A DNA stretch of 64,000 bases from Octopus bimaculoides (lineage: Eukaryota): NCBI RefSeq assembly GCF_001194135.2, contig NC_068999.1, forward strand, positions 2,514,935 to 2,578,934, read 5' to 3'. Made by a program: the position numbers and the translations under genes. Each line of letters starts with the position of its first letter. Within the stretch, counting starts at the first letter, position 1. The notes under the pieces were generated by a model that did no database searches, was not told the origin of the DNA, and saw nothing but the letters and a program-made list of their open reading frames with translations. Of the stretch, positions 11,989 to 62,500 are shown piece by piece.

Positions 11989-13284
11989 ATCTAGCTTAAT
12001 ATATTTATGCAATAATATATATAAATGTGTTCTTTTGTTTTTTTGTTTTTTGAGGAGGAAATCTGAAATACTTTCTAACATTTTCCATGTTACTTTATAC
12101 CAAACACTCCCTCCTAAGTCTAGGAGTGTTCCTTAGACTGCATTGCTTTATATTCACAATGGATTATGTTAAGGTTGGTATATAACAGACATAATGGAAT
12201 TCTACACTTAACAAAGTTAATATTTCATTATGTGTGTGTGTGTTAAAGTGCTCAATGCATGTTTGTGAAGGAAGTGGACAGATTCTGATGTATAACCCTC
12301 TATATACGTGTTTTAATCCATAAGTGGTTTCGTATAAGTATCTAAACAGATAAAGCTGACAAAGAAATGTCTATTTTTTCCAAAGTTATATAAATAGACC
12401 CCTGCATCTCCAGTTGACTATCAAAAAAACGGGATCTTATAATGCAAATTCATAGGATAGAATTTTCTAATTAAGATGCTTAATTAACTTTTATTTAAGC
12501 AAACTTCAATTGGAAGAATTTTAGATCATTCCAAAAGCAATTTCTCCATTAGTTGCAGGGGTGGTTGTGTGGTAAGAAGCTTACTTCCCAATCACATGGT
12601 TCCAGGTTCAGTCCTACTGTGTGGCACCTTGATCAAGTATCTTCTACTATAGACTTGGACTGATCAAAGGTGGATTTGGTAGATGGAAACTGGAAGAAGC
12701 CTGTCATATGTGTGTCTGTGTTTGTTCCCTATCATCACTTGACAATCAGTGTTGGTTCATTTATGTCCCTGTGACTTAGTGGTTTGGCAAAAAGAGACCA
12801 ATAGAATAAGTGCCAGGCTTAAAAAAGAAAAAAATAAGTGCTGGGGTCAATTCATTCAACTAAAAGTCCTTCGAGGTGGTGCTCCAACATGGCCACAGTC
12901 TAATGACTGAAACAGATAAAGAAATTAAACTTATAAATCTGAGTTAGTGGAATAAAATGTTGAACTTAAACAAAGAATTTTTGTCCATAGAAATTTGTAT
13001 TTATCTCATGATACTTGCCAGTTTTAGTTTTATCATCCAATAATCCCAAATCCTTGATTCACTTAAGTATTTCCATAGTTGCCATTTAATTCCAATTTGA
13101 TTAGAAAAATTTGGAAACTACTATCTCTGCAACAGAACACTAAATCACAATATTTTTTTTTACCAAATGAAACTTCAAAGTATTGAAAAAATTCTTTATT
13201 TTAATGAATGAGAAGTTATTAAAAATGACTCACTTTATTATTGCATTATTGGTACATTATTGTTTCAGCAGGTCACTGATATAT

Positions 13285-35330: not shown

Positions 35331-35513
35331 CAATATTTGGCAAAGTAAAACAACAAATCCTTTCTAACCGACATTATNNNNNNNNNNNNNNNNNNNNNNN
35401 NNNNNNNNNNNNNNNNNNNNNNNNNNNNNNNNNNNNNNNNNNNNNNNNNNNNNNNNNNNNNNNNNNNNNNNNNNNNNNNNNNNNNNNNNNNNNNNNNNNN
35501 NNNNNNNNNNNNN

Positions 35514-43200: not shown

Positions 43201-46200
43201 TTTTAGCAATTAATTATTATTTCTCTTATCTGTTAATGCTGGATATTTTTAAATAACCATTTTCTTTTTAGCTTGGGAGAGAACCATTTTGTTATATGCT
43301 AGACATAAACATTTGCAAAAGTACTAGTTTTTGATAAAAGACTCAATCTATGAATTTATGTTAATAAAAAAAAATCTACCTGGCAAAGCTTTGTTTTTTT
43401 GAAAGACAATTTACTGGAAACTTCATTGTATTTTTTAATCCTCGTGTTTTCTTTTCAAGGAAGCCCAGTTGGACTCCTGATGATAAACTGATGGTCCGTC
43501 TACACAACAACGATGTTGAGTTTTATGAAAATGGAGATTTTGGTATGTTGCCGTAATGTTATATTTTAGAATTGAAATTTATGAAATAAAGAAAGACATT
43601 TATTCAGTGTTTATCAACAAGTATATTTGATTATTTTTACAATCTGATCAATTGCAATACCTCAAATGAAATGTTGAGAAAAATTTAAATTTCAACACAC
43701 TTTATATATTTTATTTAAAATATTCTCCAGATTATAGTGATATTAAAAAAAAAAAAAAATTAATAATGTAATGAGCATAGCTTTACTTTGTTTATTTCTC
43801 TCACTACTATGAATTTATTTAGTAGCATTCTGCTGGCTAGAAGCCTTTCTCTACACCATTCTAACACAAGATTCATTATGAAGAAATGATGTTGATTACA
43901 CTTATGCATATCTTTTGAATGAAACAATAATTTGACATTTTGATTTTTATTCTAGATAATCCAAAGACACGTCTTCATGCTGCAAAAATTTCTGAATATG
44001 CTTTTTCTAAGAGCGACCATGTTGCCATCTATATTCCTGGGAGTAAAGTGAGATTTTATCTTTATGCCATGTTTGCTATTTTAGGACCATTATATTTGAA
44101 ATAGTTCTTTTTATTTTACATCCATGTGTGAAATCTAACATTGTTTGGTCTGTTTGAATAACAGCTTGTAAGATAGTTGAACAGCAGTTAGACAAAACTG
44201 ATGTGAAAAGTACAGTTATGTTGGAGGGACAGTCAGACAAGTGTTAAATTGGAGGGTCAGATAGATTTGCAGTTGAGATAAATATTACTGGTATTAAACA
44301 ACTGGTTAAGCTGTCAGCCTACAAGTTTGACTACTTAAAGAAACAATGTTTTTGAGTCTATCGTTGATGCTGGACTGTTCTGATCTGATAAACAAAATAA
44401 TTTTCATTATTGGCTCTGTCCAATTAATTCTTTAATAGGTACTTTAACTAGAATTACGAGAATTTGCATTGCTGGATTTAAATCTTGTCAGAGATGAAAC
44501 CTGTAATTGAACGTTGGGATTATACAAGAAAACTGTGGTCAGTGCTGTCTCGTGCAGCATGACGCCTTCCAGTAATGCTGGTAGTAATTAAAAACAAAAA
44601 ACAAAACAAAAAAACTCATTGATTATATTTGTTTTTTAAGCAAAATGTATTTTCTAAATTGTTTAAGATGTAAATTGTAATAAGATTTGTAAAATGGTTC
44701 ATTCAACCATCTTTAAATTTGGATGTAGTTGTTAGTTGGAGAATTTCTTCTAAGATTTCATCAAATCTTTATATAATCTTCTTTGATTTTCAGGGTCAGC
44801 CATCAAATATTCGAATCTTCAAACATCCCAACTTCAATGGATGTCCCTTGGCAAATAAGAGCTTTTTCAAAGCTGACAAAATTACAATGTATTGGAATAA
44901 AGCTGGTGAGTGTAGATGTCTGTATGTGTGGAGTATATATAAATAAACTGTTTGAAATATTGTATTTTCACCATTTAATTCCTTTATATTTTTGTACAGC
45001 TTAGATGATGGAGGAATTGTAAGCCTAGTACTTACTCTATCAGTCGCTTTTGCTGAACCGCTAAGTTATGGGGACGTAAGCACACCAGCATCAGTTGTCA
45101 AGCAGGCGGGGGGGGGGGGGGACAAACACACACACACACACACACACATAAATATATATATATATACGACAGGCTTCTTTCAGTTTCCATCTACCAAATC
45201 CACTCATAGGCATTGGTCGGCCCAAGGCTATAGTAGAAGACACTTACCTAAGGTGCCACGCAGTAGGACTGAACCCAGGACCATGTGGTTGGTCTTCAGG
45301 TCTTCTCCAGCACAGAATCTTTATGATCACATGCCATCTTTTTCATGAGATCAGTCTTCACATGTCATTTTTTTTTGTGCATAGATTCATTCCTCTTTGT
45401 TTTTCTTTCCCTATTGGTCATCCTGCATTTTAATACCTCACATATCCTTTACTCTCTCTGTTCACTGGTGGTCCATTGTTTATGCACACAAACATTAATG
45501 TATACAGCAGAGCATGTTTGCCTCTGTTTTTTTTCCAACCTGTTGCACACATTCTCTGCATTCAATACCTGTTTCACTACTGTGCAACATTGCACTTCAT
45601 ACACAACCTTGCCCCAGCACAATTTGGCCCTCCATAACAAAACGCAAGAAGCTGTGCTGGAAACGCTTCATCCAATCCGAGTTAAAAATCTTGATTCTTC
45701 ACATGAATTCTGGTTTTATTCTTGATTCTAATTTTATTATTTTCAAGTGGTCATCTTTTTTTCTTCAGTTTTATTTTGTTTTTATTGCTTATACTTTACT
45801 CATCCATATTACTTTTTCTCTCTTTCTTGCCACTATTTTCTTAAATCTATTTTGAAGAGCTAAAAGTAATTTTAGAACCATTAATCCATATTTTCTCTGT
45901 TTTACCCTCCTTCTTCTCAGGTACCGGTTTGCTTGTGATTACATCAACAGAAACTTCAGACAAGTCATATTATGGAGAAACTGGCCTTCATTACCTTAGT
46001 ATAAAAGGTGAAGGTTGCCTTGTACCAAGAGGTAAATATTTTCATAACACACATGTTAATGCTCGCTTTGATTTAATACTTTGTCCTGCACGACTTCCTC
46101 TTGGATTTATTGAGGAATGAGACATTCAGTAAAGTGGTTGGTGATAGGAGGGGCATCCAACCATAGAAACTTGTCCAAAAATGGAACTCATATGCAAGGC

Positions 46201-48489
46201 ATGGAATCCATTAGCAGTGTCATAAGTTATCTGTCTAGCTGGGGTAGGAGCTCTAAATTAAGGACGGATACAGAGTGGAGATGAATCTACAGTCTGTGTC
46301 ACATTGAACACTTTATCCTTCCAATCCATTATGGAAAAATGGATGTAAAAATGAGGAGGATGGGAGTAACTTTCATGAATTAACCGTAAAACCTTGATAT
46401 TTTTAGTGGTATTTATACACATTTAAAGTAAATGAATGACTTTACTTTCAGCTAAAGATGGTCCTGTCTACTGTGTGGAGTGGCATCCCAATTCTACCCA
46501 ATTCTGCGTGGTTTATGGTTGTATCCTTTCATTTACTTCTATTTTCAATTGCCATTAAATAAACTTTATCAAATTATTTTCCGTTCTTTTGTACGGATTG
46601 TGTATGACCTCTACCTAAATCTACTTGTATCCCTTCTCATCTCTTTAATGTTTATCCCCCATGTTCCCACTCAAGGCTTTGTCTAATACTTTTTCTTCAA
46701 ACCAATAATCCTTTTGGAACATTCTCCTTTATGATTTTCTCTCAAACACCTGACCGTCAAAAGCTCAAATTGATATTAATCCTAATAACTATTTCCATCT
46801 TCTTCAGGTGGGCATGCAAAATCAATGGAAGATTTCTCTTTAGACTAAATTATAGATTAAAAATGCACATTGATATAGTTTTTCTTTTGCTGTAGGACAC
46901 TATTTGGTATGGTTGAAATTTTGAAGATGTTTAATAATCTTTTCTCCTCTAGGCACAAGGCCTGAAATTTTTTTTGGGCGGGGCAGTCGATTAGATCAAC
47001 CTCAGTACATAACTGGTACTTGATTTATCAACCTCGACAGGATTTAAGGCAAAGTCGACCTCAGCAGAATTTGAACTCAGAACGTAAAGACAGACGAAAT
47101 ACCGCTGAGCATTTCGCCTGGTGTGCCAGCTCACCACCAATGTTATTGTCTTGGCCATCATAAAAATAACGGAGCTGCTTTACCATATTTGGAATTACAG
47201 ATTTAAACAAAAATGTATTTTTAAATATAAAAAAATAAATTGTAACGTCATGCAACAGATGCACATGAATTTCTCTGTCGTCCAGTGTCATTCATGTGCA
47301 ATCTTCCATGACAGGCCAGAAGAAATACCCCCAGTTTGAAATTCCACTTTATTCAGATATTGCTTACTGGATAAGCTACAACTGTAGGTGTACAAGACTG
47401 AAATGTCTTGTCTTTATCACGATATCAGGACAGTTTGTCCCTATCTCCCTATTTGTATGTTTTCAAATATCTCAGAGAATCACGTCTTCATTCTTTTCAA
47501 CTATTTCTGGGATATACTTGTTCAATATTTCAACTTAGAAAAGGTTCATTTCCTTAACTATTTTTCTCTGCTACTAAGTAGCTGTCTCCTCTGTCGTGTA
47601 TCATGACATGGTCACTATGAAGTATCCAAACAGAACGAGGCTAATGTCCTCATCAACTTTACTGCCATACTTTAAAACATTCAGATTTGATATTTCACTT
47701 CAGTGTTTTTCTTGTAAAAACTGGTTGCTAGATACTTCACCTGGTTTAGCAATTATCGGGTCTTTATTTTCTCATTTTTGTTGAGTTCTTTGGAACTAGA
47801 TGTAGCTCTGTCACATATTAGAGTTGAAGATTGTTCATGGAGAGGTTTTCTTTTTTTTTTTTTACTTGATTGTATTTTTGTTTGTTATAGTTTCTTGAAG
47901 TTTTTTTTACATTCTAGTATTTTTTTTTTTTAAAGAATATGTAGTTAGATTGCCTTTTTCTGTATTTTGTTTCTGTTTTGAATGCAATATTTTTTGTCAT
48001 GTTTTGCCTGTCATAATTTTGTTTCTATTTTATCTAAGTTTTTCTCTTAATCCCAGCTACACCGCTGTGTTTTTAAATAAGTTATTTGATGATAAAAATC
48101 TTTGTATGCACTTCTATTTAAATGTTTTGCTGTGATCAAAAGTTATTCCTTAACCACATATTCCAGTTATGCCAGCCAAAGCTACACTCTATAACTTGAA
48201 ATGTGATCCTGTATTTGATTATGGAACTGCTCCACGGAATTCAGCCTTTTATAACCCACAGGGAAACAATATCCTTTTGCGCTATACTTCACCTTTGTGG
48301 AAAATGTCTTTCCTTAGAGATATGTGATGATAATTAGAGCCCTGTCAATTAGAGAGGTAGGACTTATTCTTTGTAAGCCTAGTACTTGTTCTATCGGTCT
48401 CTTTTGCCGAACTGCAAAGTTACAGGGACGTAAATACAGCAGCATCGGTTGTCAAGCGATGGTGGGAGGACAAACACGGATACACAAAC

Positions 48490-48531
<42 letters not shown>

Positions 48532-51500
48532 NNNNNNNNNNNNNNNNNNNNNNNNNNNNNNNNNNNNNNNNNNNNNNNNNNNNNNNNNNNNNNNNNNNNN
48601 NNNNNNNNNNNNNNNNNNNNNNNNNNNNNNNNNNNNNNNNNNNNNNNNNNNNNNNNNNNNNNNNNNNNNNNNNNNNNNNNNNNNNNNNNNNNNNNNNNNN
48701 NNNNNNNNNNNNNNNNNNNNNNNNNNNNNNNNNNNNNNNNNNNNNNNNNNNNNNNNNNNNNNNNNNNNNNNNNNNNNNNNNNNNNNNNNNNNNNNNNNNN
48801 NNNNNNNNNNNNNNNNNNNNNNNNNNNNNNNNNNNNNNNNNNNNNNNNNNNNNNNNNNNNNNNNNNNNNNNNNNNNNNNNNNNNNNNNNNNNNNNNNNNN
48901 NNNNNNNNNNNNNNNNNNNNNNNNNNNNNNNNNNNNNNNNNNNNNNNNNNNNNNNNNNNNNNNNNNNNNNNNNNNNNNNNNNNNNNNNNNNNNNNNNNNN
49001 NNNNNNNNNNNNNNNNNNNNNNNNNNNNNNNNNNNNNNNNNNNNNNNNNNNNNNNNNNNNNNNNNNNNNNNNNNNNNNNNNNNNNNNNNNNNNNNNNNNN
49101 NNNNNNNNNNNNNNNNNNNNNNNNNNNNNNNNNNNNNNNNNNNNNNNNNNNNNNNNNNNNNNNNNNNNNNNNNNNNNNNNNNNNNNNNNNNNNNNNNNNN
49201 NNNNNNNNNNNNNNNNNNNNNNNNNNNNNNNNNNNNNNNNNNNNNNNNNNNNNNNNNNNNNNNNNNNNNNNNNNNNNNNNNNNNNNNNNNNNNNNNNNNN
49301 NNNNNNNNNNNNNNNNNNNNNTATATATATATATGCATATGATAGGTTTCTGTGTACAAAATCCACTCACAAGGCTTTGGTCATCCTGAGGCTATAGCAG
49401 AAGACACTTGCTCAAGGTGCCATGCAGTGGGACTGAACCTGGAACTATGTGGTTGGGAAGCAAGCTTCTTACCACACAGCCACGCCTATACCAAAATGAT
49501 TTTTATCTTAATTACATAGACTCTAGATTACTTCCAAAACCGATGGAGTTACAAGCTTTGCCTAATTATAATTATATTCAGTATGGATAGTCCATTTCAC
49601 TATTCCTATAAAATCAATAGATATTTGATAATTTTATTTTTAATTTAATTAGTAAATTTTATTGTTGAAGTTTTAGATAATTTCTGAAAATTCATCATCA
49701 TCATCATCATTTAATGTCCGTTTTCCATGCTGGCATGGGTTGGACAGTTTGACTGGGGACTGGCAAGCCAGGAGGTGGCACCAGGTTCCGATCTGGTCTG
49801 GCAATGTTTCTACAGCAGGATGCCCTTCATAACGCCAACCACCCAGAGAGTGTAGTGGGTGCTTTTTACGTGCCATCGACACGAGGGCCAGTTAGGTGGG
49901 CCTGGCATCGATCACGTTCGGATGGTGCTTTTTACATGCCACTAGCACAGGGGCCAGTCAGTGAGTACTGGCATCGACCACGTTCGGATGGTGCTTTTTA
50001 CGTGCTACCGGCACAAGAGCCAGTCAGGGTACTGGCATTGGCCATGTTCGGTTGGTGCTTTTTACATGCCATCAGCACGAGAGTCAGTCAGGGGGTATAC
50101 TGGCATCGACCACATTTGGATGGGACTTTTTATGTGCCACCAACACGAGAGCATCAACATTATTTTTCCTTTACTGTTAACTTTTGTGTTTGGCTGGATT
50201 TGGTAATTTGCAAGGTGATTTGGAATTCTGGGATCTTCAGCAACAAAAAGTGATCAGTTCTACTAAAGCAATGGATACAACACATTTTGCTTGGTGTCCT
50301 GATGGTGTTCACTTTATTACAGCTACCATGGCTCCTCGACTCCGTGTTGGTAATGGGTAAGTACTTTATTATTATTATTATTATTATTTTGTATTTGCAT
50401 TGGCAAGATGCTCCTTCAATTTGCTTGAAAGTTCATCCCAATTAGGTTATTAAAATTCTTCATCTAAAAAAAAACAATGGCAGCAAAAGTGAAAGGATGG
50501 ATGATGACGGTGACTACAATTCTTACCTACACCACCAAAAGTAAAGGGACAGCTACAGCAACATGGCAAATAAAGAGAACAAGCAAACCTTGTCGACGAC
50601 CATCTCCTGCACACACCTTTACATCATTTCAGCCACAACAGAAATAGCACCACCAAAACCCAGCTGTCTCACTACCAGGGATGTCACTTTGACCAATATG
50701 CCTGTTGTTGGTTATGATATCTTTATTAAAGCAATGACTGCTACGCCTAAACTGCCGAAACTGTGTCTTTTGCTAATTCAGGCAAAGATATGCGGAAAAT
50801 TTGATAAGGTAACTAAGGGAGGATGAAGAGGAAACTCTTGCCATACCAGAACATATTAACAAACCAGGAGGTGCATAGTAACCTACTCTTACATAGGACA
50901 AAAGAAAAAGTAGATGGGTGGAAAGACCAAATCTAGCTGAAATAGAATTCTGTTCTGACAGAAAGAACTCTAAAAATTCGAAGAATTAATCCTGATATTC
51001 TCATATCTTGGCTGATGTGTGGCAAACATATTGGTTGATAGCAGCTGGCTGGCATTGAAGAGGAGACCCAGGTATTAGACGTTTGTAAGTTTTGCAATGA
51101 GAACTAAAGGAATAAAGGAATGGTGCTCTTGATCCAAACAGAGCAGGATATAACTGAAGCCATCCCTGACCTAATTCACTTGTTAGATAAAACCCATTTG
51201 TTTGTGCTGATAGAAGACTGAAGGCCAAGGTGTCACATGTGTGGGTTTTTTTTTGTCCACAGCAGAGGAGGCCAAACGAAAGGTCCCCACTGCTGTTAAT
51301 ATCACAACTTGAATAATATGAATGATAGCAGGCGACTACAATGACAATAATTATTTCAATAGTAAAATCAGTAGCAGCTGTGAAAGTAAGGGCAGCCGTA
51401 ACAGCAGTGCCAACCGAAATGCAGAACAGAACCCTAATGACAACAAAATGCTCCGTCTCTACAAAATAGCATAAAACGTTTGGGTCACCATTTAGATTAT

Positions 51501-52365
51501 TCAGGTTTGTCCTGCAACGAGGACCATAAAGATGGAAATTAGAAAACGGTCCCTTGTAAGAAGGGAGAAAGAAACGGGAAAGGGACACAACAAATCTACA
51601 CTCACAAAAAGCTGAGAGATTGAGAGGGAGGAAATTGATGTGATTCCTAATAATTAATGGAAACTCTTCTGCTTGACCTCCTTTTACAACAGCAGAAAAA
51701 ATATTTATCCAATTAATGAAAAAAAAAAAATGAAGTTTAGAAAATGACTAATTTTTGATATTTTTTTAATTTAATTTCCTTTCAGGTATAAACTGTGGCA
51801 TTATACTGGAAGTATTTTGGCTCAGTTGGAAATACCGTCTGGAAAAGAATTATGGGAGTCATTATGGATGCCAGATATGGATGGCAAATTCCCTTCGAAA
51901 TCTATTGTGTATAAGAAGGTACCATCNNNNNNNNNNNNNNNNNNNNNNNNNNNNNNNNNNNNNNNNNNNNNNNNNNNNNNNNNNNNNNNNNNNNNNNNNN
52001 NNNNNNNNNNNNNNNNNNNNNNNNNNNNNNNNNNNNNNNNNNNNNNNNNNNNNNNNNNNNNNNNNNNNNNNNNNNNNNNNNNNNNNNNNNNNNNNNNNNN
52101 NNNNNNNNNNNNNNNNNNNNNNNNNNNNNNNNNNNNNNNNNNNNNNNNNNNNNNNNNNNNNNNNNNNNNNNNNNNNNNNNNNNNNNNNNNNNNNNNNNNN
52201 NNNNNNNNNNNNNNNNNNNNNNNNNNNNNNNNNNNNNNNNNNNNNNNNNNNNNNNNNNNNNNNNNNNNNNNNNNNNNTATCGATCTCTTTTGTCAAACTG
52301 CTAATTTACAGGGACATAAACACACCAACACCAGTTGTCAAGCGATGGTGGGAGGACAAACACAA

Positions 52366-52416
<51 letters not shown>

Positions 52417-55400
52417 CACGATGGGCTTCTTTCAGTTTCCGTCTACCAAATCTACTCGTAAGGCTTAGGTCGGTCCAAGGCTATATAGTAGAATGCCCAA
52501 AGTGCCATGCAGTGGGACTGAACCTGGAACCATGTGGTTGGTAAGCAAGCTACTTACCATACAGCCACATCTGCAGACTCCTTCACATCAACCCTACCAT
52601 CATAGAAAAGAACACGTTGGGTAAAGTGGCCTTGGGTTCCATACACAACTTGGTGAAAAGAGGGATTGTTTATAACTGAAATTCCTTTCATCTGAAGTCT
52701 ACTCAGTCAGCCTAAACACCCATCACCAACTTAGATGATATCTTGTATTTTATTTCTCATATTTCTTTTTTTAGGTCGAATGGGTTCATCTAGATTGTAT
52801 GTTTCTTGTAGGGCATCTTTTGAAGCCTTTCTCGTCCAATATTTTATGAGGTTCATTAAGACTTGATAGGGTTTTATATTTTTTACTATTGTAGGACTTG
52901 AATTCTTTTGCTAGTTTGACAGAAAAAAGTATTCTGCTCAAGGATTCTGTTTAGCTATTCACACATTCAACTTGGCTGCTTTCCCATTCGTTGGAAAGTC
53001 TCTGGCTATTATTGTGTTACTCTAAGAAACAATTATATACTTTAATAATTGAAACTAAAATTTCTTTAACATGTTATAAATTTGAAATTTATTTTAAATA
53101 TATTTGCAGTGAAACCTGTTGCTGCCTATCGCCCTCCACACGCTCGCGGTCAGCCTGCTTCAGATTTTAAGTTACATGAATTCGAACCTCCTTCCAATAA
53201 AAAAATTCCAGGTCTTAGTGAGTAATGTGTTTTTTCTTAATATTCTCATTTGTTTGAACAAAATGTTGGAAGATGAAAGTTTCTAACTCAGATTTGAAAT
53301 AAATTACTAGGAATAAACTTACCAGTGTAGTTTGCTGAATCAAATTCTTCTACAGCTATTGGCTGTGACATATAGCCAATGGATAAGATATGCTAAGCCA
53401 TTGTCTTGTTGTGCTGTTGCTGTCAACTTGGCTACAAATATCTGTACCTTGATAGCTGACATGTCTTAAGAAAAGCTGTCTAAATGTTATAATCTCTTGT
53501 GTAATTGTAAGCTGTGAAATTTTAAGGCATTTTGCTTTAAGTTTTAAGGCACTGTTTTGCAAATCTACTTTACATCAGTTTGAAATATTTGGATAATGAT
53601 CTGTATTATGTTTCTGTACTTTGAAATTTAAAGACTCAAGTTATGCAAAGACAAAATTATCATTTTAGTAACTTATTTTTTTTGTTTCTAAGATATTTTC
53701 ATGAGTGAAATATGCAGGAGTCGTGATCGTAACCTACTCAACCAACACTAGTATGGAGAGCAGATGCAGAACGACAGTCATGGCTCTCTATCAACTCAGA
53801 GATAACAATTTTCAGAAAAAATATATAATTTTGAAGTGTAATGGTAATTTAAACTATATTTGGCATAAATGAAATTTTTGAAATCTTCTCTACAGATTCT
53901 GGAGACACAGGAAAAAAAGGTAATAAGAAGGCTAAAGGTCAGAAACAGGTAAATTATTTCTCTAAACACTCCATATTTTAATATAATGATTTCTGATATT
54001 GGAAAAAGGAATATATAATTATGCAGTTTCTAATTATGGCAACTCATTATGGTTTTGAAATGAAGAATGATATTGTTTAAAATTCTAGACAGCTCTGAGT
54101 TGAGATCCAGTTTATCATGATTTTTTTTTTTTTCACATATTCTCCAGTTGTCTGGAAGTAGTAAATTCTAATTTATGCAAATTAACCACTAAGTAATTGC
54201 CTGTAACAAAACTGAAAGTCAAAAAATGGTGATAAACAACAGTAATATTTTCATTTCTTTTTTCTTTAGATTCAACAAGCTAACATCCCTGGATTAGCAC
54301 CAATCACTGTTGAAAAGAAAACAAATTCTGAATCTGCCGATTTTGACAAAGATAAAAAAATAAGGAATTTAAAGAAGGTAATTACAAAACTTAATTTTTA
54401 TTTTCTAATTTTATTTTCCTCTGGAATCTTTGAAATTGGTTGGGGTGGGTGATGTATTTCATTGTGATCCTTTAAGATTAACGCTAGAACTGTAGAAAAC
54501 CATTTATGCAAAGTAAAATATTCAATCATTGGGTTGTAGAGATATGTCTGGCCATATGCACAAGTTGTAGAGTGGAGTGGTGACTTTCTTTGCATGCTTT
54601 AACATAGTGTGGAATTGGAAGCAATGCAGAATATGAGTTGCAGAGCCTTGGTTCTAGGGTAGTGGGTAGATTTCTACAAGGTTAGTATTGATCTTGACAA
54701 ATAAACCAGAACACCCAGTTGCTATTTGGTTAGTAAGAGAGAGAGATAGTAAGACCATGCAATACATCTCAGCAGACTTTACTTTCCTATTGAATGTTCC
54801 ATTTGAATATTTCACTTGTATGTGGGTAACAACTGCAAGTGAACCATTTTTGGAGGGACACAAGTGGCTCATCCCATCCTCCTAGCTGTCTTGGATTACT
54901 CTGGGGAGGCACATTTGCTGGTAAGGTTACTTACTGTAAAATCGTCAGAACTGCAACTTGGAGGAAGACTTGAAATGTCTGAATGTGTGGGTTGCATTGA
55001 ATGGGCAACATGCAATACTGTTGACATGGGTTAACTTCTTATTTTGGAAACCTTGTTATATTTTAATTCTTTTTTCTTTTTGTAGAAAATTACTCAGATA
55101 AACAAGCTGAAAGAGCAACAGAAAACTGGCAAAAAACTCGATGAAACTCAGGTAAAAATGATTTCATTGTTTAGAATTGGTATTGAAATGACCTGGAGAA
55201 TCACTACCCTCCCGCTGGTTTTTTTCCCTCTAGCAGTTGGCAGATCAGACAATATTTTTGGTTTTCTGTTACATTTTCTATTTCATTCCTTTGGAGACAG
55301 TGTAAGGAGATGCTTACGGGAAGCTGAGAGTCTTTCAGTTATGAATGTAGACACCATTACACAAACTCCATTTTAATAAGGCTATTTCAGTGTACATGTT

Positions 55401-55817
55401 GGCTTTATTGTTTTTGCTACCATATTCAGCTTCCTACTTACTTTTTCCCCAGATGCTTGGATGCACCAGTTTCAATCTCTCCCCACCAGTCTTCACATTC
55501 ATGTTTTCCTGCCATGTAACAAATGCATTTCATACAATCTGCCGTTCGGTTGGAGAGATCTTGTTAGCAGAGCTATTAGCTACCTCAACTTTTTTCACCT
55601 TATTTTAACTAATCAGGTTATTCCAGTATCAGAAGTAATCAACTACTTCCAAAGAATCTTTAAAGCATTTGCAAGAATTTATTTCATGTATGTCCCTATT
55701 GTTAACTGTTACTTCATAAGAAGTCTGATTATTGATTTTTTTTTTTTTTTCCAGTTACAAAAAATATCTAAGTATGATGAAATTACGAAAGAGATTAATG
55801 AATTGAAACTGCAATAA
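39774..55817 (+). CDS. EIF2A: Eukaryotic translation initiation factor 2A; exons 39774-39801, 41250-41316, 42011-42085, 42481-42596, 42723-42813, 43460-43542, 43956-44047, 44794-44905, 45921-46031, 46452-46520, 48167-48268, 50182-50356, 51786-(runs into gap at 51927), 53110-53217, 53896-53948, 54270-54377, 55086-55151, 55755-55817
   Basis: Spliced translation contains LRGSDG, ANKSFFKADKITMYWNKAG, DKSYYGETGLH, DGPVYCVEWHP...FCVVYGFMPAKATLYNLKCDPVFDYGTAPRNSAFYNPQGNILCLAGFGNLQG, FITATMAPRLRVGNGYKLWHYTG, AYRPPHARG and DKDKKIRNLKKK...QQKTGKKLDETQLQKI. All are eIF2A motifs and the phases are consistent. Confidence 0.96.
46521..48166 (+). other. U12-type (minor spliceosome) GT-AG intron of EIF2A
   Basis: 5' site GTATCCTTTC; branch site TTCCTTAAC at 48146-48154, 12 nt before the AG; no polypyrimidine tract. 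Splicing restores VYG-F-MPAKAT. Confidence 0.92.
48269..50181 (+). other. U12-type AT-AC intron of EIF2A
   Basis: 5' site ATATCCTTTT; branch-like TTCCTTTAC at 50166-50174; 3' end AC at 50180-50181. Splicing restores QGN-I-LCLAGFGNL. Confidence 0.9.
49690..50160 (-). mobile_element. Family C retroposon with an RTE-like (ATG)n tail and an internal ~65-bp tandem array (other copies about 350-760, 5095-5345, 31180-31660, 41560-41700, 42835-43160)
   Basis: CATCATCATTTAA.GTCCGTTTTCCATGCTGGCATGGGTTGGAC...GGATGCCCTTCCTAACGCCAACCAC followed by GTGCTTTTTACGTGCCA... repeat units. Confidence 0.8.
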
Positions 55818-57270: not shown

Positions 57271-57552
57271 TTCTACTACGAAGTGTTGAGTGAGATTTGG
57301 TTACTATGTCAAGGCTGGCTAAAGCCTTGTGAGTCGATTTGGTAGATGGAAACTGAAAGAAGTCTGTCATGTGTGTGTGTGTGTGGTCGATTTGCTCAAC
57401 TAAAAGCGGTGCTCCAGCATGGCCCCAGTTAAATGACTGAAACAAGTAAAAGAGTCTGGCACTCATTTGCATTCAGTTGATCATATTTATTAGAATCAAA
57501 ATTTCCAGATAACACAAAAGTATCTCTGGAGATTTAGAAATGATATATTTCT

Positions 57553-57797: not shown

Positions 57798-58282
57798 GTT
57801 ACAAAGAACAATGGAAGACTTGTCACAGGATTTGTCAGGGTCAGGTCAAAAGTCATAAAATAAACGAGCATTGTTTCAGTTCACTTAATTTATCTTTATT
57901 TTGCTGTAAAAAAGTTTTTTAGTTTTAGCTTTTAATTATGAAAGGATGATCTTAAATGAGCTGACAAAGTAAGAGGGTTTGTAAAAGATGAGCTTCATAT
58001 GAACAGAAGCAGGGGCCACACTGCTTTGTGTATGGATGGTATATATTGGATGAGAAGGCACCAGAAGTTGATAATGGGAAGTAGACTTGTTCGAATGAGA
58101 ATAGCTTGAGAACAAATCAGAGAATATTGTGCCTCATAGATTGCAGGATGCAAGCGTAGAAGAGAAATAATGTGGATTAATCCAACCCATGCCAGCAGCA
58201 AGCGAAAAATGTTAAAATGGTGATCAAAATTTTGATTTATACAATCGAAAGACAATCTTGTTTTCATTTGTTTTAAAAATAA

Positions 58283-59524
58283 TCAAAGTTCATCATGGGT
58301 ATTTAGTTGATGGAGTCCTGTACTGCTGTCAGGGTGAGTGCATTTTCCCACATGTAGAATCATGAAAGAAGTTTTATCAACAATAAAGAATAAAAATGGA
58401 TGATTAACTGTGAAAGAGGTTTCATATTTGGCTTTTTTTTCAAACAAATGACTAGATTTTCTGATGGTAGCAGGACTGCTTGTTGTTCCCAGTTCATTGA
58501 AATTGAGAAAACCTTGGTGAAGAATGTCAATTAAGTGTACGTGGGTATTTGTTAAGTTGTTATTTTCCAAATTGAAGAAATGGTCAGTCGTTTCTTTGAA
58601 TAAAATATCTTGAAAAGTCAAGTTAGATTTCATTTGAAACTTGGGTAAAATCAAAGCAACATTTCTTGGAGAAGCCTTGTTAGCAATAATTTGCCATAAG
58701 AGTCGTGATGTCAGCTGTTTTTCTATTGAAGTAATTCCTTCAATATCATCAGGAAGAACGACATAGAAACTAAACCGGTTACCAACCAAGGGTATTTCTA
58801 GACTCCTAAAACTAAAACGTTCATCTGATTTTATAGTAAAATAGTCTTCTGTATACATCATTTCAACAACTTCTGCTTGTTTTTCTGTCACATAAAAGTT
58901 TTCTCTCATGGTAAACTTTCTGTTAAATTGATTTTTCCAAAATCCTTGGAAATGCAAGCTGTTCACTAATACAGCAAATATTTCTTCATTTGTGTTGCCA
59001 AATGACATAAAATTGCTGATTCTATTTTTATGGAACTTATCACTTAATTTATCAATAGTTCTTGGATTAATTTCATCTATTTCCAAAAAGTAGTATTTGC
59101 TAATATTAATGTTGATGTTCGGAAGAAGAACTGGATCAATATATAATTTATTAGATAACTGGAAATTTGATAAACCTTGAACAGTTTTCAAATATTCTGT
59201 AAAACTTTGATGGAATAATTCCCATGAAACAGATGGATAAAGCAGAGATTGGATTTTCTCTGCAGAGTTTATTTTATCAGTCATCTGAACGAATGACAGA
59301 CTTATACTAACAAGAAATGGTGACCAGAGTATGTTTCCTGTCTTTGAATCAAGAAGTTGTTTGAATATTTTCAAAGTGAAATCATTAATTGGTACAGAAA
59401 TGTCATGTTTGTATTGTTGTAGTTTGTCATAATTTGCTGACGGTGTGTCAGCTAAGGCAACGAAATTATTAGTGAATAAAAATATGATATACGTACTTAC
59501 TATGAAAACACTGAATACATACAT
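58283..59524 (-). CDS. Serpin family protein, intronless CDS of 413 aa from the ATG at 59524, with signal peptide and C-terminal HDEL
   Basis: ORF contains NILWSPF, VLVNSLHFQGFWKNQF, FYV...VEMM, LEIPL, VVLPD, LPKFQM, ILHQGFLNFNELGT and FTVNHPFLFFIVD...ILHVGK. The track start is a TTG; the first ATG gives the hydrophobic MYVFSVFIVSTYIIFLFTNNFVALA. A polypyrimidine-AG acceptor at 59543-59544 suggests an upstream non-coding exon. Confidence 0.93.
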   Translation of the reverse strand: MYVFSVFIVSTYIIFLFTNNFVALADTPSANYDKLQQYKHDISVPINDFTLKIFKQLLDSKTGNILWSPFLVSISLSFVQMTDKINSAEKIQSLLYPSVSWELFHQSFTEYLKTVQGLSNFQLSNKLYIDPVLLPNININISKYYFLEIDEINPRTIDKLSDKFHKNRISNFMSFGNTNEEIFAVLVNSLHFQGFWKNQFNRKFTMRENFYVTEKQAEVVEMMYTEDYFTIKSDERFSFRSLEIPLVGNRFSFYVVLPDDIEGITSIEKQLTSRLLWQIIANKASPRNVALILPKFQMKSNLTFQDILFKETTDHFFNLENNNLTNTHVHLIDILHQGFLNFNELGTTSSPATIRKSSHLFEKKAKYETSFTVNHPFLFFIVDKTSFMILHVGKCTHPDSSTGLHQLNTHDEL

Positions 59525-62500
59525 GTTGGTATAGACTGGACGCTGGAAAATATAAACATTACTGAATTTTATTAAAAGAAACAAAACTTTAGATCTTATA
59601 AGCACCAATATGAGGTAGAATAGAGAAAGAAGCTCCCACGAATATGCTTCTAATGTCAGGTAATCTATTGTGTAATTAATAATGTAGTTAATGAGAAAGT
59701 GACAGGTACAGGATTTGAGTCAGCCAATTTCTGTTTTGTTGACATTCATTTACAATTAGTGTGCGATGTTAAAGGAAGGATACGCAAGCACACACACACG
59801 ACAGGCTTCTTTCAGTTTCTGTCTACCAAATCACATCCTTACCATCACCATCTTCAAGTAGAAAGAAGGACAGAAGAGACCTGGATGCATCTTTGCTCAA
59901 AGCGCAGGAATATCCAAGACTATATCATAATTTGACAACAGGGCAGGAGTGATGTGCACATTACACAGGTAATTTGAGGGGCAAACTGTAGCATCGACTA
60001 CTAATAAAGATAGCCTTCGCGGTAGGCACCAAAAGATACAGGACCTGATCTCCCATGTTCATGAAACAGGCAGCAGTAAAGTTGGTGAACAAGATTGTAA
60101 AAGTCATCCTAGAAAAAAATATGAACGAGGCGCTGGAACGATGGAAAAAACAACAAAGGCCTCGAATAAACACAAAATTTTGTCCTATAGTATACGACAC
60201 AACTAAGCAGAGCTTGGAAAAGTTAACATCAAGATGGCTTTGAGTGCGAGGCTATTATTCTTGCTTCATTTTTAGAACAATGAAACCAAGCTCAACAGAA
60301 ATGTCTCTAGGCTCCAAATTCAATCAAATCCTGTTAAATTAAGAAAGGCCAAGACTGGACCACCCCTTGTTGCTATTTTTCAATTACAGAATGGAACTTC
60401 AATAATGTCTTTAAGATTTATAGGCTACACACCTCAGCGGTCTACTCAGTGTTAGCAGATGGATTAACAGAGTTTCATAGGGAAAGAGAAACACANNNNN
60501 NNNNNNNNNNNNNNNNNNNNNNNNNNNNNNNNNNNNNNNNNNNNNNNNNNNNNNNNNNNNNNNNNNNNNNNNNNNNNNNNNNNNNNNNNNNNNNNNNNNN
60601 NNNNNNNNNNNNNNNNNNNNNNNNNNNNNNNNNNNNNNNNNNNNNNNNNNNNNNNNNNNATAATTAAGAGCAGACATCGTCGATGAAGTATCTTTTTGGA
60701 CTATAATTCTTGTTTGTGTATTGAATAATTGAAACATGGTAATTTAACTGAAATTAGTGGTAAAAAGACAAAGAATTTTCACGAAATACTTACATAACTG
60801 AAGAGAAAATCCAGAAACTGTAAAGTTCGTAAAAATTCTGTTAATTGAAAAAAGTCGGTGCTTGTTTGCAAGGGGAGTTAATTCGTTTGAAGAGTCGCAA
60901 CTCTTCTATTCAAGCTGTACTCCACTCTAACAGTTATACTCAGCTCTTCTATTTAAGTTGTGCTCCACTCTTAGAGTCGTACTCAACCGAAAAATATATC
61001 AGAAAAATTAACTGAATGTGGTTTATTTCATCACTATGTTTAGATATAACGCATTAATAATGTTTTTTTGTTAATCAGGTTTCAGTATGTTACAATAAAA
61101 ATTCAGTGGAAAAGAATACAATTTACAAAAGTTATCTGTAAGAAAAAAAAAATGCAAAAAAGCTGTAAAGAAAATGATTTGAAATGAATAAATACATAAA
61201 CAAGAAAAAGCTATGTACACTCTTTCAGTTATACGTCGGGGCTGAGAAAAAATTTTTGCCAGCAGCCTTGCATGCACGAACGTCTCAAAAGCTACAGGTT
61301 TAGGATTAGAGAAATCAAAGTTGATTTCAGTAGAATGCGATCCTTGAGATACGAGGCTCTGAATATCTATTGTGAAACATCTCATATGCCTCTTTCTCCA
61401 GTCTAGCAATAGTCTTGAAAATACTTTTAATACAAATTAAGCCTAATCAAATCAGCTGGCATCTGTTTATATTTTAATAAAGTGAGGTACAAATGGAATT
61501 ATAAACTGCTTCTGTAAATTGAGGTTTTTCGATAAACCAAACATTTGTCTTTAGCAAATGTGACAAGAAAAATTATCTTCAGCCTCATAAATTTGACCTC
61601 TTTCAATTTAATTTCTAACAATTCAACAATTATCAGTCATATTTTAGTGTAGTATTAATTAACAGTTACTCACTCCGTTTTCCTTTTAAATATTTTGGAA
61701 ATTAATTAAATATTTTATAAGAATTTATTTCAATATCGGATTAGCAGTCCATTAGGAGTTATTTCCCTTTACCCGCCAATATCCTTTACTTTTGGAACTT
61801 GAGAATTTTTGTGCAGTTGTAGATTCAATGTTGGATGAGAACCCAACGATGCTACTACTGTCTGTAGACCACAATATGTCAACCGTTTACCAACTGCAGT
61901 TTGGACGGAGTTGTCCTGTAGTTAGGTAGCACTTTGCCCTGGCTATTTGCATCAAAGCAGAATTAGAAATGAGAAAAAAAAAAAAAAAAAAAATTTGCCC
62001 GACGCCGTAGGAATTTCGCAAATTCACCTTTGAATTGGAATTGTATTTATCAGCCCCGTAAGGATGAACGGCAAACCTGTCTTGAATGAAGTTCAAATCT
62101 TTCTCTAATCAAATTTAACTCTCAATCTTTTCATTGTGTTAGCCCAACTCGACTGCCAGCATTTCTTAACTAAATAATGTTTTTTTTTTTTTTTTCATTG
62201 ATAAAAGTTACACATTTGTATGGAAGGACAATATTCGATCGAATATTACTGGTATTGCTTTTAGTGACCAGAAGTTAACAAGCAAAGTCAATTCTAATTT
62301 GATTTGAAGAACGGAAAGGGTCTTCTGCCAGAATAAGTAGTTGGCAGAAACTAGTTATTCTGCCAACACAAAAGTAATTTGTGTTACGTGCGTATTAGTG
62401 CATGTGTACACGCACGAACACAAACACAAACACACACACACACACACGTGTACGTACGTAATTATGTATGTCATGTTTAATACATACTTCTGATTCAGTT

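What the first reader, a model, noticed from the sequence alone, without database searches (positions are those of the whole stretch)
58283..59524. ER-retained (HDEL) serpin with a non-inhibitory hinge: possible HSP47-like chaperone analogue
A signal peptide plus C-terminal HDEL (58286-58297) predicts ER lumen residence. The hinge E-L-G-T-T-S-S-P-A-T places Pro at P10 (58472-58474); the P10 Ala-to-Pro change is known to convert antithrombin from inhibitor to substrate. The shutter motif is SPFL rather than SPxS. There is no RxxR furin bait at the expected P1 (H-L|F by counting; RK falls at P6-P5), unlike the HDEL/KDEL convertase inhibitors Drosophila Spn42Da and amphioxus Spn1. The best-known ER-resident non-inhibitory serpin is the collagen chaperone HSP47 (RDEL). 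This may be an independently evolved cephalopod ER chaperone or decoy serpin (inference).
Basis: partly seen in the sequence, partly recalled or inferred. Interest (0 to 1): 0.75.

Follow-up and report, generated by a model that had tools for sequence, protein, structure and literature searches.

The report
Octopus ER-retained serpin, inhibitory hinge lost
This is a real, conserved octopus gene for a serpin that is probably held in the endoplasmic reticulum; it descends from a family of ER-resident protease inhibitors but has lost the sequence features needed for protease trapping, and it shows no specific likeness to the collagen chaperone HSP47.

Summary
Window 58283-59524 (minus strand, Octopus bimaculoides) is one uninterrupted 413-codon ORF encoding a serpin (Pfam 5e-58). 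It has a hydrophobic N-terminus, a C-terminal HDEL, the hinge ELGTTSSPAT (Pro at P10) and the shutter SPFL.

HDEL, the P10 Pro and the RCL blocks RKSSH and EKKAK are identical in O. sinensis and Argonauta hians. dN/dS is about 0.2.

None of 217 other serpins has Pro at P10, Ser at P12, or Leu at the Ser56 position. The octopod proteins keep only 35-37 of 67 near-universal serpin residues; the mean for other serpins is 63.

The nearest relatives (99% bootstrap) are HDEL/HEEL serpins from unannotated transcriptomes. They have a canonical hinge and RR|S or KR|S bait. So ER retention was inherited from the known ER convertase-inhibitor kind of serpin, not newly evolved. The octopod RCL has a 4-residue insertion that puts the ancestral dibasic pair (now KK) out of register.

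The HSP47 collagen-site residues are not conserved (Asp385 is Asn, Arg222 is Glu).

Best reading: a non-inhibitory, ER-resident derivative of a convertase-inhibiting serpin. Its actual function is unknown, and expression and localisation are untested.

The parts
58283..59524 (-). Complete coding sequence (413 codons plus TGA) of the serpin, in a single coding exon
   Evidence: ORF. Pfam PF00079 5.3e-58 over residues 47-398. Called as a 413-aa gene in the O. bimaculoides assembly and as single-exon 413/414-aa genes in O. sinensis and Argonauta hians. dN/dS 0.18-0.21.
59543..59573 (-). Conserved block AATAAAATTCAGTAATGTTTATATTTTCCAG ending 19 nt before the ATG. Probably a polypyrimidine tract plus 3' splice acceptor of a 5'-UTR intron (inference).
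   Evidence: Nearly identical in Octopus and Argonauta, while the sequence further upstream does not align. Coordinates.
59450..59524 (-). Predicted signal peptide, residues 1-25 (MYVFSVFIVSTYIIFLFTNNFVALA, then DTPS)
   Evidence: Maximum Kyte-Doolittle score over 11 residues is 2.59. The N-terminus is hydrophobic in all orthologs, and the relative P0010 has a classical one. In the AF2 model it is a separate low-confidence helix, residues 2-18. No dedicated signal-peptide predictor was available.
59312..59323 (-). Shutter motif S68-P-F-L71, with Leu in place of the near-universal Ser56 (alpha1-antitrypsin numbering)
   Evidence: Ser in 200 of 217 other serpins and Leu in none. Leu in all three octopods; P0010 has Thr and P0166 has Ser. 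HSP47 has SPVV here.
58616..58624 (-). N-glycosylation sequon N301-L-T, conserved in octopods
58550..58558 (-). N-glycosylation sequon N323-L-T, conserved in octopods
58466..58495 (-). Hinge P17-P8: E-L-G-T-T-S-S-P-A-T, non-consensus at P16, P13, P12, P11 and P10
58472..58474 (-). P10 Pro351 codon (CCT)
   Evidence: Pro in 0 of 217 other serpins. Conserved in O. sinensis and Argonauta. The non-inhibitory serpin PEDF has Pro at the same position (EDGAGTTPSP).
58454..58465 (-). Four-residue RCL insertion I354-R-K-S357 relative to P0010/P0166. It carries the RK pair at P6-P5.
   Evidence: BLASTP and MAFFT place the same gap. R355-K356-S-S-H359 is invariant in octopods.
58433..58438 (-). K363-K364, aligned with the KR/RR P2-P1 bait of P0166/P0010. 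It lies at P3'-P4' by canonical counting.
   Evidence: E362-K-K-A-K366 is invariant in octopods.
58394..58414 (-). Strand s1C motif F-T-V-N-H-P-F, identical in P0010/P0166. Asn374 occupies the position of HSP47 Asp385.
58286..58330 (-). Flexible C-terminal extension (residues 399-413) ending in the ER-retrieval signal HDEL (58286-58297)
   Evidence: pLDDT below 50 for residues 402-413. HDEL is conserved in three octopods; the sister clade has HDEL or HEEL.

Best explanation
The locus is a functional Octopus bimaculoides gene for a soluble serpin. The protein most likely enters the ER through an N-terminal signal peptide and is returned there by the KDEL receptor through its C-terminal HDEL.

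It descends from the known kind of ER-targeted serpin that traps proprotein convertases with a Lys/Arg-Arg bait. On the octopod stem lineage the trapping machinery was dismantled in four ways:
- The hinge acquired Pro at P10, together with Leu at P16, Thr at P13, and Ser at P12 and P11.
- The shutter Ser56 became Leu.
- About 30 of 67 near-universal core residues were replaced.
- A 4-residue insertion moved the ancestral dibasic pair (now KK) four residues beyond the canonical P1 and created a second pair (RK) four residues before it.

The new sequence has since been kept under purifying selection.

Most likely mechanism (inferred): the protein no longer inserts its loop fast enough to form a covalent complex. 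It acts instead as a stable, non-inhibitory ER/cis-Golgi resident whose conserved basic loop is bound, or slowly cleaved, by basic-residue-specific proteases of the secretory pathway. That would make it a bait without a trap, acting as a competitive decoy or buffer. Alternatively the loop may serve as a docking surface for some other luminal partner.

Shown: the gene, the fold, conservation, ancestry, and the rarity of the substitutions. Inferred: ER residence and loss of inhibition. Speculative: the partner.
For: Gene and fold:
- establish the ORF and serpin identity.
- AF2 with a 127-sequence alignment gives pLDDT 78.7 and pTM 0.80: a native serpin with the RCL (350-364) and the tail (402-413) disordered. 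Its Foldseek matches are native serpins.

Selection:
- Orthologs at 92% and 68% identity, all with a single coding exon.
- dN/dS 0.18-0.21 with dS about 0.9-1.0 between Octopus and Argonauta.
- A conserved putative splice acceptor lies just upstream of the ATG.

ER targeting:
- Hydrophobic N-terminus and two conserved sequons; HDEL conserved.
- HDEL binds the KDEL receptor about 10-fold more tightly than KDEL (abstract of PMC8248988, listed).

Ancestry:
- The clade octopods + P0010 + P0166 has 99% NJ bootstrap. Identity is 35% and includes the segment before helix A and the HDEL.
- The sister sequences have the hinge ESGS[TV]AAAAT and IKRR|S or IEKR|S.
- All 13 other xDEL/xEEL serpins among the top hits have canonical hinges, and most have a basic P1.
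- Literature: ER-signal serpins with KR bait inhibit convertases and are intron-poor (PMC2556349).

Loss of inhibitory features:
- Residue statistics.
- 35-37 of 67 conserved columns are kept, against a mean of 63 (sd 4) for other serpins and 58-59 for the sister clade.
- The hinge consensus comes from PMC2770083.
- PEDF is a natural precedent for P10 Pro in a non-inhibitory serpin. HSP47 also lacks Ser56.

From my own knowledge, not verified here: the antithrombin Ala384Pro (P10) variants behave as substrates, and changing RCL length by more than about 2 residues on the N-terminal side of the scissile bond abolishes stable complexes (Zhou, Carrell and Huntington 2001).
Against: - No biochemical, localisation or expression data exist. 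No transcript-derived copy of the octopod protein was found in the searched collections: each cluster has one member, from the genome only. The sister clade, by contrast, sits on more than 150 transcript-size contigs.
- A P10 Pro does not always abolish inhibition completely. As I recall, hinge mutants can be partial inhibitors depending on the protease.
- Total RCL length (32 residues from P17 to the s1C Pro) is within the normal range of 26-36. A canonical-register P1 Leu/Ile therefore remains geometrically possible.
- The RCL is only about as conserved as the rest of the protein, not more so.
- The insertion rests on a short alignment, although two programs agree on it.
- The species of the sister sequences is unknown.
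- The signal peptide was judged by hydrophobicity only.
Confidence: 0.5

Rival explanations
1. It is still a suicide inhibitor, retargeted from convertases to proteases that cleave after Leu or Ile (chymotrypsin-like, elastase-like or subtilase-like). It would guard the ER of secretory cells against prematurely active digestive or venom proteases, using the canonical-register P1 Leu360 (Ile in Argonauta).
For: - Counting 17 residues from the hinge Glu gives P1 = L/L/I and P1' = F/I/L.
- Total RCL length of 32 is normal.
- P17 Glu, P15 Gly, P14 Thr, P9 Ala, P8 Thr, the breach Trp196 and His336 are retained.
- P12 and P11 Ser fall within the (AGS) consensus.
- The gene is under purifying selection.
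Against: - Pro at P10 fails the consensus and occurs in 0 of 217 serpins. The only natural example I confirmed, PEDF, is non-inhibitory.
- P16 is Leu and the Ser56 position is Leu.
- 30 of 67 core residues are lost, including N158, T165 and G312 (each rounds to 1.00 conserved in other serpins) and Y246 and F391 (0.99 each).
- The putative P1 and P1' are the variable positions of the loop, while the flanking RKSSH and EKKAK blocks are invariant. For a specificity-determining P1 one would expect the opposite.
Confidence: 0.2
2. It is an HSP47-like collagen chaperone: an ER-resident serpin that binds folded procollagen triple helices.
For: - It combines an ER-retrieval signal, a non-consensus hinge and the absence of Ser56, as HSP47 does.
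- HSP47 itself is reported to be absent from invertebrates, so that role could be open to another protein (PMC5583329).
Against: - Identity to dog HSP47 is only 25% (74.7 bits). HSP47 is not among the best 60 PDB sequence matches and ranks 28th or lower by structure.
- The collagen-contact residues defined in PMC8301893 are not conserved: Asp385 to Asn374, Arg222 to Glu208, Tyr383 to Thr372, Tyr245 to Ile231, Ser305 to Ile292, His273/His274 to Asp259/Asp260.
- The same residues are found in the canonical inhibitory sister clade, so they are not a new adaptation.
- Phylogenetically it derives from an inhibitor clade, not from clade H.
Confidence: 0.05
3. It is a functionless relic: a gene that lost its role and is slowly decaying or barely expressed.
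For: - Many conserved serpin residues are lost and the branch is long.
- No transcript-derived copies were found in the searched protein collections.
Against: - The 413/414-codon ORF is intact in three species across dS of about 1.
- dN/dS is about 0.2 both on the recent Octopus-Octopus branch and on the deeper one.
- Most of the derived residues are fixed identically in all three species.
- HDEL, the sequons and the upstream acceptor block are conserved.
Confidence: 0.05

Closest known systems
ER-targeted proprotein-convertase-inhibiting serpins: Drosophila Spn42Da/Spn4A (HDEL), Branchiostoma Spn1 (KDEL), sea-urchin Spu-Spn-1, and the uncharacterised HDEL/HEEL serpins P0010 and P0166
   Same: - Serpin fold, signal peptide, and a C-terminal H/KDEL-type signal on a short extension.
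- Basic residues in the RCL.
- No intron in the serpin core, as reported for the sea-urchin and Nematostella genes.
- 99% bootstrap grouping with P0010/P0166, and shared motifs (YxxxQQxK[HY]D[LI]S, FTVNHPF, DKTSxMIL).
   Different: - The hinge is non-consensus (P16 Leu, P13 Thr, P12/P11 Ser, P10 Pro).
- The shutter Ser56 is Leu.
- A 4-residue RCL insertion is present.
- The dibasic pair is KK, not KR or RR, and sits at P3'-P4'.
- About 30 of 67 near-universal residues are replaced.
- No inhibition has been shown.
HSP47 / SERPINH1
   Same: An ER-retrieval signal of the [RKH]DEL type, a non-consensus hinge, no Ser56 (SPVV), and non-inhibitory status (predicted here).
   Different: - 25% identity.
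- The collagen-binding residues are not conserved.
- HSP47 is reported to be vertebrate-only, with a 4-exon/3-intron gene.
- The octopod gene arose from an inhibitor clade.
PEDF / SERPINF1
   Same: The hinge has hydroxylated residues at P12-P11 and Pro at P10: EDGAGTTPSP against ELGTTSSPAT. PEDF is a well-known non-inhibitory serpin (own knowledge).
   Different: PEDF is secreted and has no ER signal. There is no specific sequence relationship (it ranks 39th in Foldseek).
Ovalbumin and ovalbumin-related protein X (the automatic NCBI name for the orthologs)
   Same: Serpin fold. Clade-B-like serpins (MENT, SERPINB1, B3) are the best PDB sequence matches.
   Different: The name is a best-hit label. 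The octopod protein has a signal peptide and HDEL, and is only 25-27% identical to bird clade-B serpins.
Neuroserpin / SERPINI1 lineage (Kumar and Ragg 2008)
   Same: A secretory-pathway address signal at the C-terminus. The lineage is proposed to include the invertebrate KDEL/HEEL serpins.
   Different: Membership was defined by PDCD10 microsynteny, which was not found within 10 kb upstream here and could not be tested properly. Deep serpin phylogeny is unresolved.

Membership tests
Serpin superfamily (PF00079) | Full-length match to the serpin profile, and the serpin fold | tested here: met
   Pfam 5.3e-58, 197 bits, profile positions 4-370 of 370. AF2 pTM 0.80. Foldseek E 5e-29 to native serpins.
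Inhibitory serpins | Hinge consensus P17-P9: E[EKR]G[TS]x(AGS)4 | tested here: not met
   ELGTTSSPA fails at P16 (Leu) and P10 (Pro). Consensus from PMC2770083. Pro at P10 occurs in 0 of 217 serpins.
Inhibitory serpins | Conserved shutter and core residues (Ser53, Ser56, N158, T165, G312, Y246, F391 and others) | tested here: not met
   Ser53 is kept, but the Ser56 position is Leu. Only 35-37 of 67 columns that are at least 85% conserved are retained, against a mean of 63.
Inhibitory serpins | SDS-stable covalent complex with a target protease; stressed-to-relaxed transition on RCL cleavage | not testable with these tools
   Needs recombinant protein.
Soluble ER-resident proteins (KDEL-receptor cargo) | C-terminal [KHR]DEL exposed at the very C-terminus | tested here: met
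   HDEL followed by the stop codon. Conserved in 3 octopods. The tail is disordered in the model.
Soluble ER-resident proteins (KDEL-receptor cargo) | Cleavable N-terminal signal peptide | tested here: inconclusive
   Hydrophobic h-region, an A-L-A then D site, and conserved sequons. No SignalP-type predictor was available, and the Argonauta N-terminus is less hydrophobic.
Soluble ER-resident proteins (KDEL-receptor cargo) | Observed ER localisation that depends on the signal | not testable with these tools
   Experiment needed.
ER-targeted convertase-inhibiting serpins (Spn4A / Bl-Spn1 type) | Lys-Arg or Arg-Arg immediately before the scissile bond, in canonical register | tested here: not met
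   The canonical P2-P1 is His-Leu. RK lies at P6-P5 and KK at P3'-P4'. The sister clade has KRR|S or EKR|S.
ER-targeted convertase-inhibiting serpins (Spn4A / Bl-Spn1 type) | Common descent with members that carry the ER signal and a dibasic bait | tested here: met
   99% bootstrap with P0010/P0166. Relationships to Spn4A and Bl-Spn1 themselves are unresolved.
Neuroserpin orthologue lineage (Kumar and Ragg) | Head-to-head microsynteny with PDCD10 | tested here: inconclusive
   No gene is called within 10 kb upstream in O. bimaculoides or O. sinensis. In Argonauta the only called gene upstream is an rve integrase, about 2 kb away. Octopus genes are long, so this is a weak test.
HSP47 / SERPINH1 | Collagen-binding residues (Asp385 salt bridge to the collagen Arg; Arg222, Tyr383, Tyr245, Ser305, His273/274) | tested here: not met
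   The equivalents are N374, E208, T372, I231, I292 and D259/D260. Residues defined in PMC8301893.
HSP47 / SERPINH1 | Clade H / group V6 ancestry and a 4-exon gene structure; vertebrate distribution | tested here: not met
   Single coding exon. 25% identity. Groups with invertebrate HDEL inhibitor-type serpins. HSP47 is reported only from vertebrates.

The most novel reading that the evidence does not exclude
Octopods converted what appears to be their only ER-resident convertase-trapping serpin into a non-inhibitory luminal protein whose basic loop is still conserved. This would be an invertebrate parallel to the origin of HSP47, in which an ER serpin fold is repurposed as a binding protein, chaperone or competitive convertase regulator (in the manner of 7B2 or proSAAS). 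It would imply that convertase control in the octopod secretory pathway was rewired.
Probability: 0.3. Interest if true: 0.6.

Novelty: new variant of a known kind. Interest (0 to 1): 0.4.

Why it matters
ER-retained serpins are few. Those described so far are either true convertase inhibitors (Spn4A, lancelet Spn1) or the vertebrate collagen chaperone HSP47.

This gene looks like a dated, lineage-specific switch from the first class towards a non-inhibitory state. Its sister clade still shows the ancestral state. In their survey of 12 Drosophila genomes, Garrett et al. found no orthologue set that mixed inhibitory and non-inhibitory serpins, so such a switch would be notable.

If confirmed, the gene would be a natural experiment on how a serpin trap is disabled while the fold, the address signal and the loop are kept. 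It would also raise the question of how octopods control convertases in the early secretory pathway.

It remains a sequence-based inference about one uncharacterised gene. Non-inhibitory serpins of unknown function are common, so the interest is moderate.

Tried and rejected
- **AF2 with a shallow alignment.** The 3-sequence ortholog alignment gave an unusable model (pLDDT 29). The run was repeated with 127 serpins.
- **Species of the sister sequences.** I could not identify the species behind P0010/P0166 (Logan contigs from SRR27666087, SRR27666077, SRR27666070, SRR24189490 and SRR9970007). No paper in the library mentions these runs, and no cluster member carries a name. The only hint is that the variant differences are all of the A-to-G recoding type.
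- **Deeper phylogeny.** Nodes above the octopod + P0010/P0166 clade have less than 35% bootstrap. Orthology to Spn4A, Bl-Spn1 or neuroserpin cannot be claimed.
- **PDCD10 microsynteny.** I did not pursue it, because 10 kb of flank is too little in this genome.
- **Retrogene origin.** I considered this as an explanation for the single coding exon and set it aside. The ER-serpin lineage is reported as intron-poor, and a conserved acceptor-like block suggests a 5'-UTR intron.
- **A paralogue cluster in the window.** None was found by tblastn.
- **Literature.** No paper on this octopus serpin was found. A search for the antithrombin P10 Pro variant found no usable source, so that point rests on my own knowledge.
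- **RCL length.** The idea that the RCL is abnormally long overall was rejected. Its length of 32 is within the normal range.
Full report
**What is there**

On the minus strand, window 59524 to 58283 is one uninterrupted reading frame of 413 codons plus TGA. It is the only long ORF in the 64 kb window that is not an artefact of N runs. The window comes from Octopus bimaculoides chromosome record CM046619.1, where the same 413-aa product is a called gene.

The protein matches the Pfam Serpin model end to end (5.3e-58) and 189 distinct PDB serpin sequences. MENT, SERPINB1 and SERPINB3 are the best of these. With a 127-sequence alignment, AlphaFold2 gives a confident native-state serpin (pLDDT 78.7, pTM 0.80). 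Only four kinds of region are disordered: the signal-peptide end, two surface loops (168-179 and 321-328), the reactive-centre loop (350-364) and the last 12 residues. Foldseek returns ordinary native serpins.

- HDEL at 58286-58297.
- Pro351 (P10) at 58472-58474, within E-L-G-T-T-S-S-P-A-T.
- The shutter S-P-F-L at 59312-59323.
- P1|P1' = Leu360|Phe361 by counting 17 residues from the hinge Glu, with R355-K356 at P6-P5.

**Is it a working gene?**

Orthologs exist in O. sinensis (92% identity) and Argonauta hians (68%). Each has the whole CDS in a single exon. Nei-Gojobori dN/dS is 0.18-0.21, with dS of 0.19 between the two Octopus species and about 0.9-1.0 to Argonauta. The frame has therefore been held under purifying selection over a long period.

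The following are identical in all three species: HDEL, the P10 Pro, the loop blocks R-K-S-S-H and E-K-K-A-K, and the shutter Leu. Two N-glycosylation sequons (N301, N323) and a hydrophobic N-terminus are also conserved.

A 31-nt block ending in TTTTCCAG lies 19 nt upstream of the ATG. It is almost identical in Octopus and Argonauta, while everything further upstream fails to align. I read it as the 3' splice site of a 5'-UTR intron (inference).

One caveat applies. The protein collections hold no transcript-derived copy of the octopod protein, so expression is unverified.

**How unusual is the sequence?**

I aligned the protein with 217 other single-domain serpins gathered by exhaustive HMMER and word-index searches:

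| Position | Other serpins | Octopod residue | Others sharing the octopod residue |
|---|---|---|---|
| P10 | Ala in 203 | Pro | 0 |
| P12 | Ala in 212 | Ser | 0 |
| P13 | Glu in 197 | Thr | 5 |
| P16 | Glu or Lys in 176 | Leu | 2 |
| Ser56 equivalent | Ser in 200 | Leu | 0 |

The hinge fails the published inhibitory consensus E[EKR]G[TS]x(AGS)4 at P16 and P10 (PMC2770083).

The change goes beyond the hinge. Of 67 columns that are at least 85% conserved in 215 other serpins, the octopod proteins keep only 35-37. Other serpins keep 63 on average (sd 4, 5th percentile 56). Almost all of the replacements are the same in Octopus and Argonauta. Lost residues include N158, T165 and G312 (each rounds to 1.00 conserved in the others) and Y246 and F391 (0.99 each).

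The total loop length from P17 to the s1C proline is 32 residues, which is normal (range 26-36).

**Where it comes from**

An exhaustive profile search of 1.84 billion representative proteins found one close relative, P0010, at 258 bits. It is a 414-aa serpin with a classical signal peptide and a C-terminal KHDEL. A second relative, P0166, ends in KHEEL and is 74% identical to P0010.

These are 35% identical to the octopus protein along the whole length. The match includes the segment before helix A, the motif FTVNHPF(L/M)F, DKTSxMIL, and the HDEL. Neighbour-joining puts octopods + P0010 + P0166 together in 99% of bootstraps. All deeper nodes are unresolved.

The two relatives have a textbook hinge (ESGS[TV]AAAAT) and the baits I-K-R-R|S and I-E-K-R|S. 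They retain 58-59 of the 67 conserved residues.

Among the top hits, 13 further serpins end in KDEL, HDEL, KEEL or similar. All have canonical hinges, and most have Lys-Arg or Arg before Ser. This is the kind described by Kumar and Ragg: ER-signal serpins with a Lys-Arg bait that inhibit proprotein convertases (Drosophila Spn4, lancelet Spn1). The sea-urchin and sea-anemone genes of this kind have no introns in the serpin core (PMC2556349).

Three conclusions follow:
- The ER address and the single coding exon are inherited, not invented in cephalopods.
- What is new in octopods is the loss of the inhibitory features.
- The octopod branch is long. Its distance to outgroups is about 1.8, against 1.3 for P0010.

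No canonical P0010-like protein from an octopod was found in the searched collections. The octopod gene therefore looks like the orthologue rather than an extra copy, subject to how complete the annotations are.

The species behind P0010/P0166 is unknown. The sequences come only from transcript-length contigs of SRA assemblies, more than 150 of them, and none is NCBI-annotated. The amino-acid differences among the variants are I to V, N to S, D to G and N to D. All are A-to-G recodings, with the common form carrying the A. This looks like coleoid RNA editing and suggests a well-sampled decapodiform. I could not verify it.

**The loop**

BLASTP and MAFFT independently align the octopod loop to the relatives' loop as follows:

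```
octopod   ...P-A-T-I-R-K-S-S-H-L-F-E-K-K-.-A-K...
relatives ...A-A-T-.-.-.-.-[SA]-H-T-I-[KE]-[RK]-R-S-A-S...
```

On this alignment the octopod loop carries a 4-residue insertion (I/V/S-R-K-S). The ancestral bait segment survives as H-x-F-E-K-K, compared with H-T-I-E-K-R in P0166. However, it sits four residues beyond the canonical P1, and a second basic pair (RK) sits four residues before it.

The positions that would be P1 and P1' in canonical register (L/L/I and F/I/L) are the variable ones. The two basic blocks are invariant.

From my own knowledge, not verified here:
- Serpin inhibition tolerates only about 1-2 residues of length change between the hinge and the scissile bond.
- The antithrombin P10 Ala-to-Pro variants are substrates.
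- P10 points into the core of sheet A after loop insertion.

I did confirm from the PDB sequence that PEDF, a classic non-inhibitory serpin, has the hinge E-D-G-A-G-T-T-P-S-P, with Pro at the same position. I also confirmed that HSP47 has S-P-V-V at the shutter and so also lacks Ser56.

**Most likely mechanism**

The protein most likely enters the ER and is N-glycosylated. Its high-affinity HDEL signal then retrieves it from the cis-Golgi; HDEL binds the receptor about 10-fold more tightly than KDEL (PMC8248988 abstract).

It keeps the serpin fold and a conserved, exposed, basic loop. It can probably no longer complete the fast loop insertion that traps a protease. I therefore favour a bait without a trap: a stable luminal protein that basic-residue-specific proteases such as the convertases bind or slowly cleave. 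That would make it a competitive decoy or buffer, or a docking protein for another partner.

The gene, the fold, the ancestry and the rarity of the changes are shown. ER residence and loss of inhibition are inferred. The partner is speculation. I put about 0.5 on this overall reading.

**Rivals**

1. A retargeted but still active inhibitor with P1 Leu/Ile (0.2). The loop length and several hinge residues permit it. The P10 Pro, the loss of core residues and the variability of the putative P1 argue against it.
2. An HSP47-like collagen chaperone (0.05). Identity to dog HSP47 is 25%. HSP47 is outside the best 60 PDB sequence matches and ranks 28th or lower structurally. The collagen-contact residues defined in PMC8301893 map to N374 (for Asp385), E208 (Arg222), T372 (Tyr383), I231 (Tyr245), I292 (Ser305) and D259/D260 (His273/274). 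The canonical sister clade has largely the same residues at these positions, differing only at the Arg222, Tyr245 and Ser305 equivalents. HSP47 is reported only from vertebrates and has a 4-exon gene (PMC5583329). A chaperone role through some other surface is not excluded.
3. A decaying relic (0.05). The intact frame, dN/dS of about 0.2 on both branches, and the fixed derived residues contradict this.

**Comparison and novelty**

The locus works like, and descends from, the ER-targeted convertase-inhibiting serpins. It fails their defining features: the inhibitory hinge and a dibasic bait in register. It shares only the ER signal and a non-consensus hinge with HSP47, and a P10 Pro with PEDF.

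NCBI's name for the orthologs, "ovalbumin-related protein X-like", is a best-hit label. I found no paper on this gene.

I rate it a new variant of a known kind. Garrett et al. found no orthologue set in 12 Drosophila genomes that mixed inhibitory and non-inhibitory serpins. If P0010/P0166 are true orthologues, this would be such a case. Interest is moderate (0.4), because the case is coherent and testable but rests on sequence alone.

Noticed in passing
window 57336-57379 and 59789-59832; other copies at 1664-1695, 12670-12701, 45172-45203 and 52424-52455: A dispersed SINE-like repeat with core GGCTTCTTTCAGTTTCCGTCTACCAAATCCAC, often next to CA/TA microsatellites. Two inverted copies (44 nt, 91% complementary) flank the serpin gene. 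It accounts for the recurring 'GFFQFPSTKSTHKAL' pseudo-ORFs in the window.
   Followed up: partly
window about 48283-55817 (+ strand); last exon within ORF 55461-55817: The neighbouring gene is tail-to-tail with the serpin, with 3' ends about 2.4 kb apart. Its O. sinensis counterpart (559 aa) has eIF2A and WD40 beta-propeller Pfam hits. The same neighbour is present in O. sinensis. It is not called within the 10 kb shown for Argonauta; there an rve integrase ORF lies about 2 kb upstream of the serpin instead.
   Followed up: partly
proteins P0289-P0302 (cluster of P0166; loci L004-L008): Variants of the canonical HEEL serpin from more than 150 transcript-size SRA contigs differ only by I to V, N to S, D to G and N to D. 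These are all A-to-G recodings, and the abundant form carries the A. The pattern resembles coleoid A-to-I RNA editing and hints that the source is a decapodiform cephalopod.
   Followed up: partly
window 58045-58077 (minus strand, 3' UTR); AATAAA at 57887-57900: A block about 33 nt long in the putative 3' UTR (CCATTATCAACTTCTGGTGCCTTCTCATCCAAT) is conserved between Octopus and Argonauta, although the coding dS is about 1. The first AATAAA lies about 385 nt after the stop codon. This may be a regulatory element.
   Followed up: no
residues 163-177 of the protein (window about 58994-59038): The octopod proteins have a 7-residue deletion at the helix E / strand s1A junction relative to P0010. The near-universal N158, W160 and T165 are replaced. 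The AF2 model is least confident here (168-179).
   Followed up: partly
window 6627-6796, 13810-14134, 17588-17758, 35378-35513, 40265-40472, 48532-49321, 51927-52277, 60496-60659: Eight assembly gaps (N runs, 2315 N in all), mostly next to TA/CA microsatellites. The nearest to the serpin is about 1 kb upstream of the ATG, so the promoter and first-exon region is incompletely assembled.
   Followed up: no
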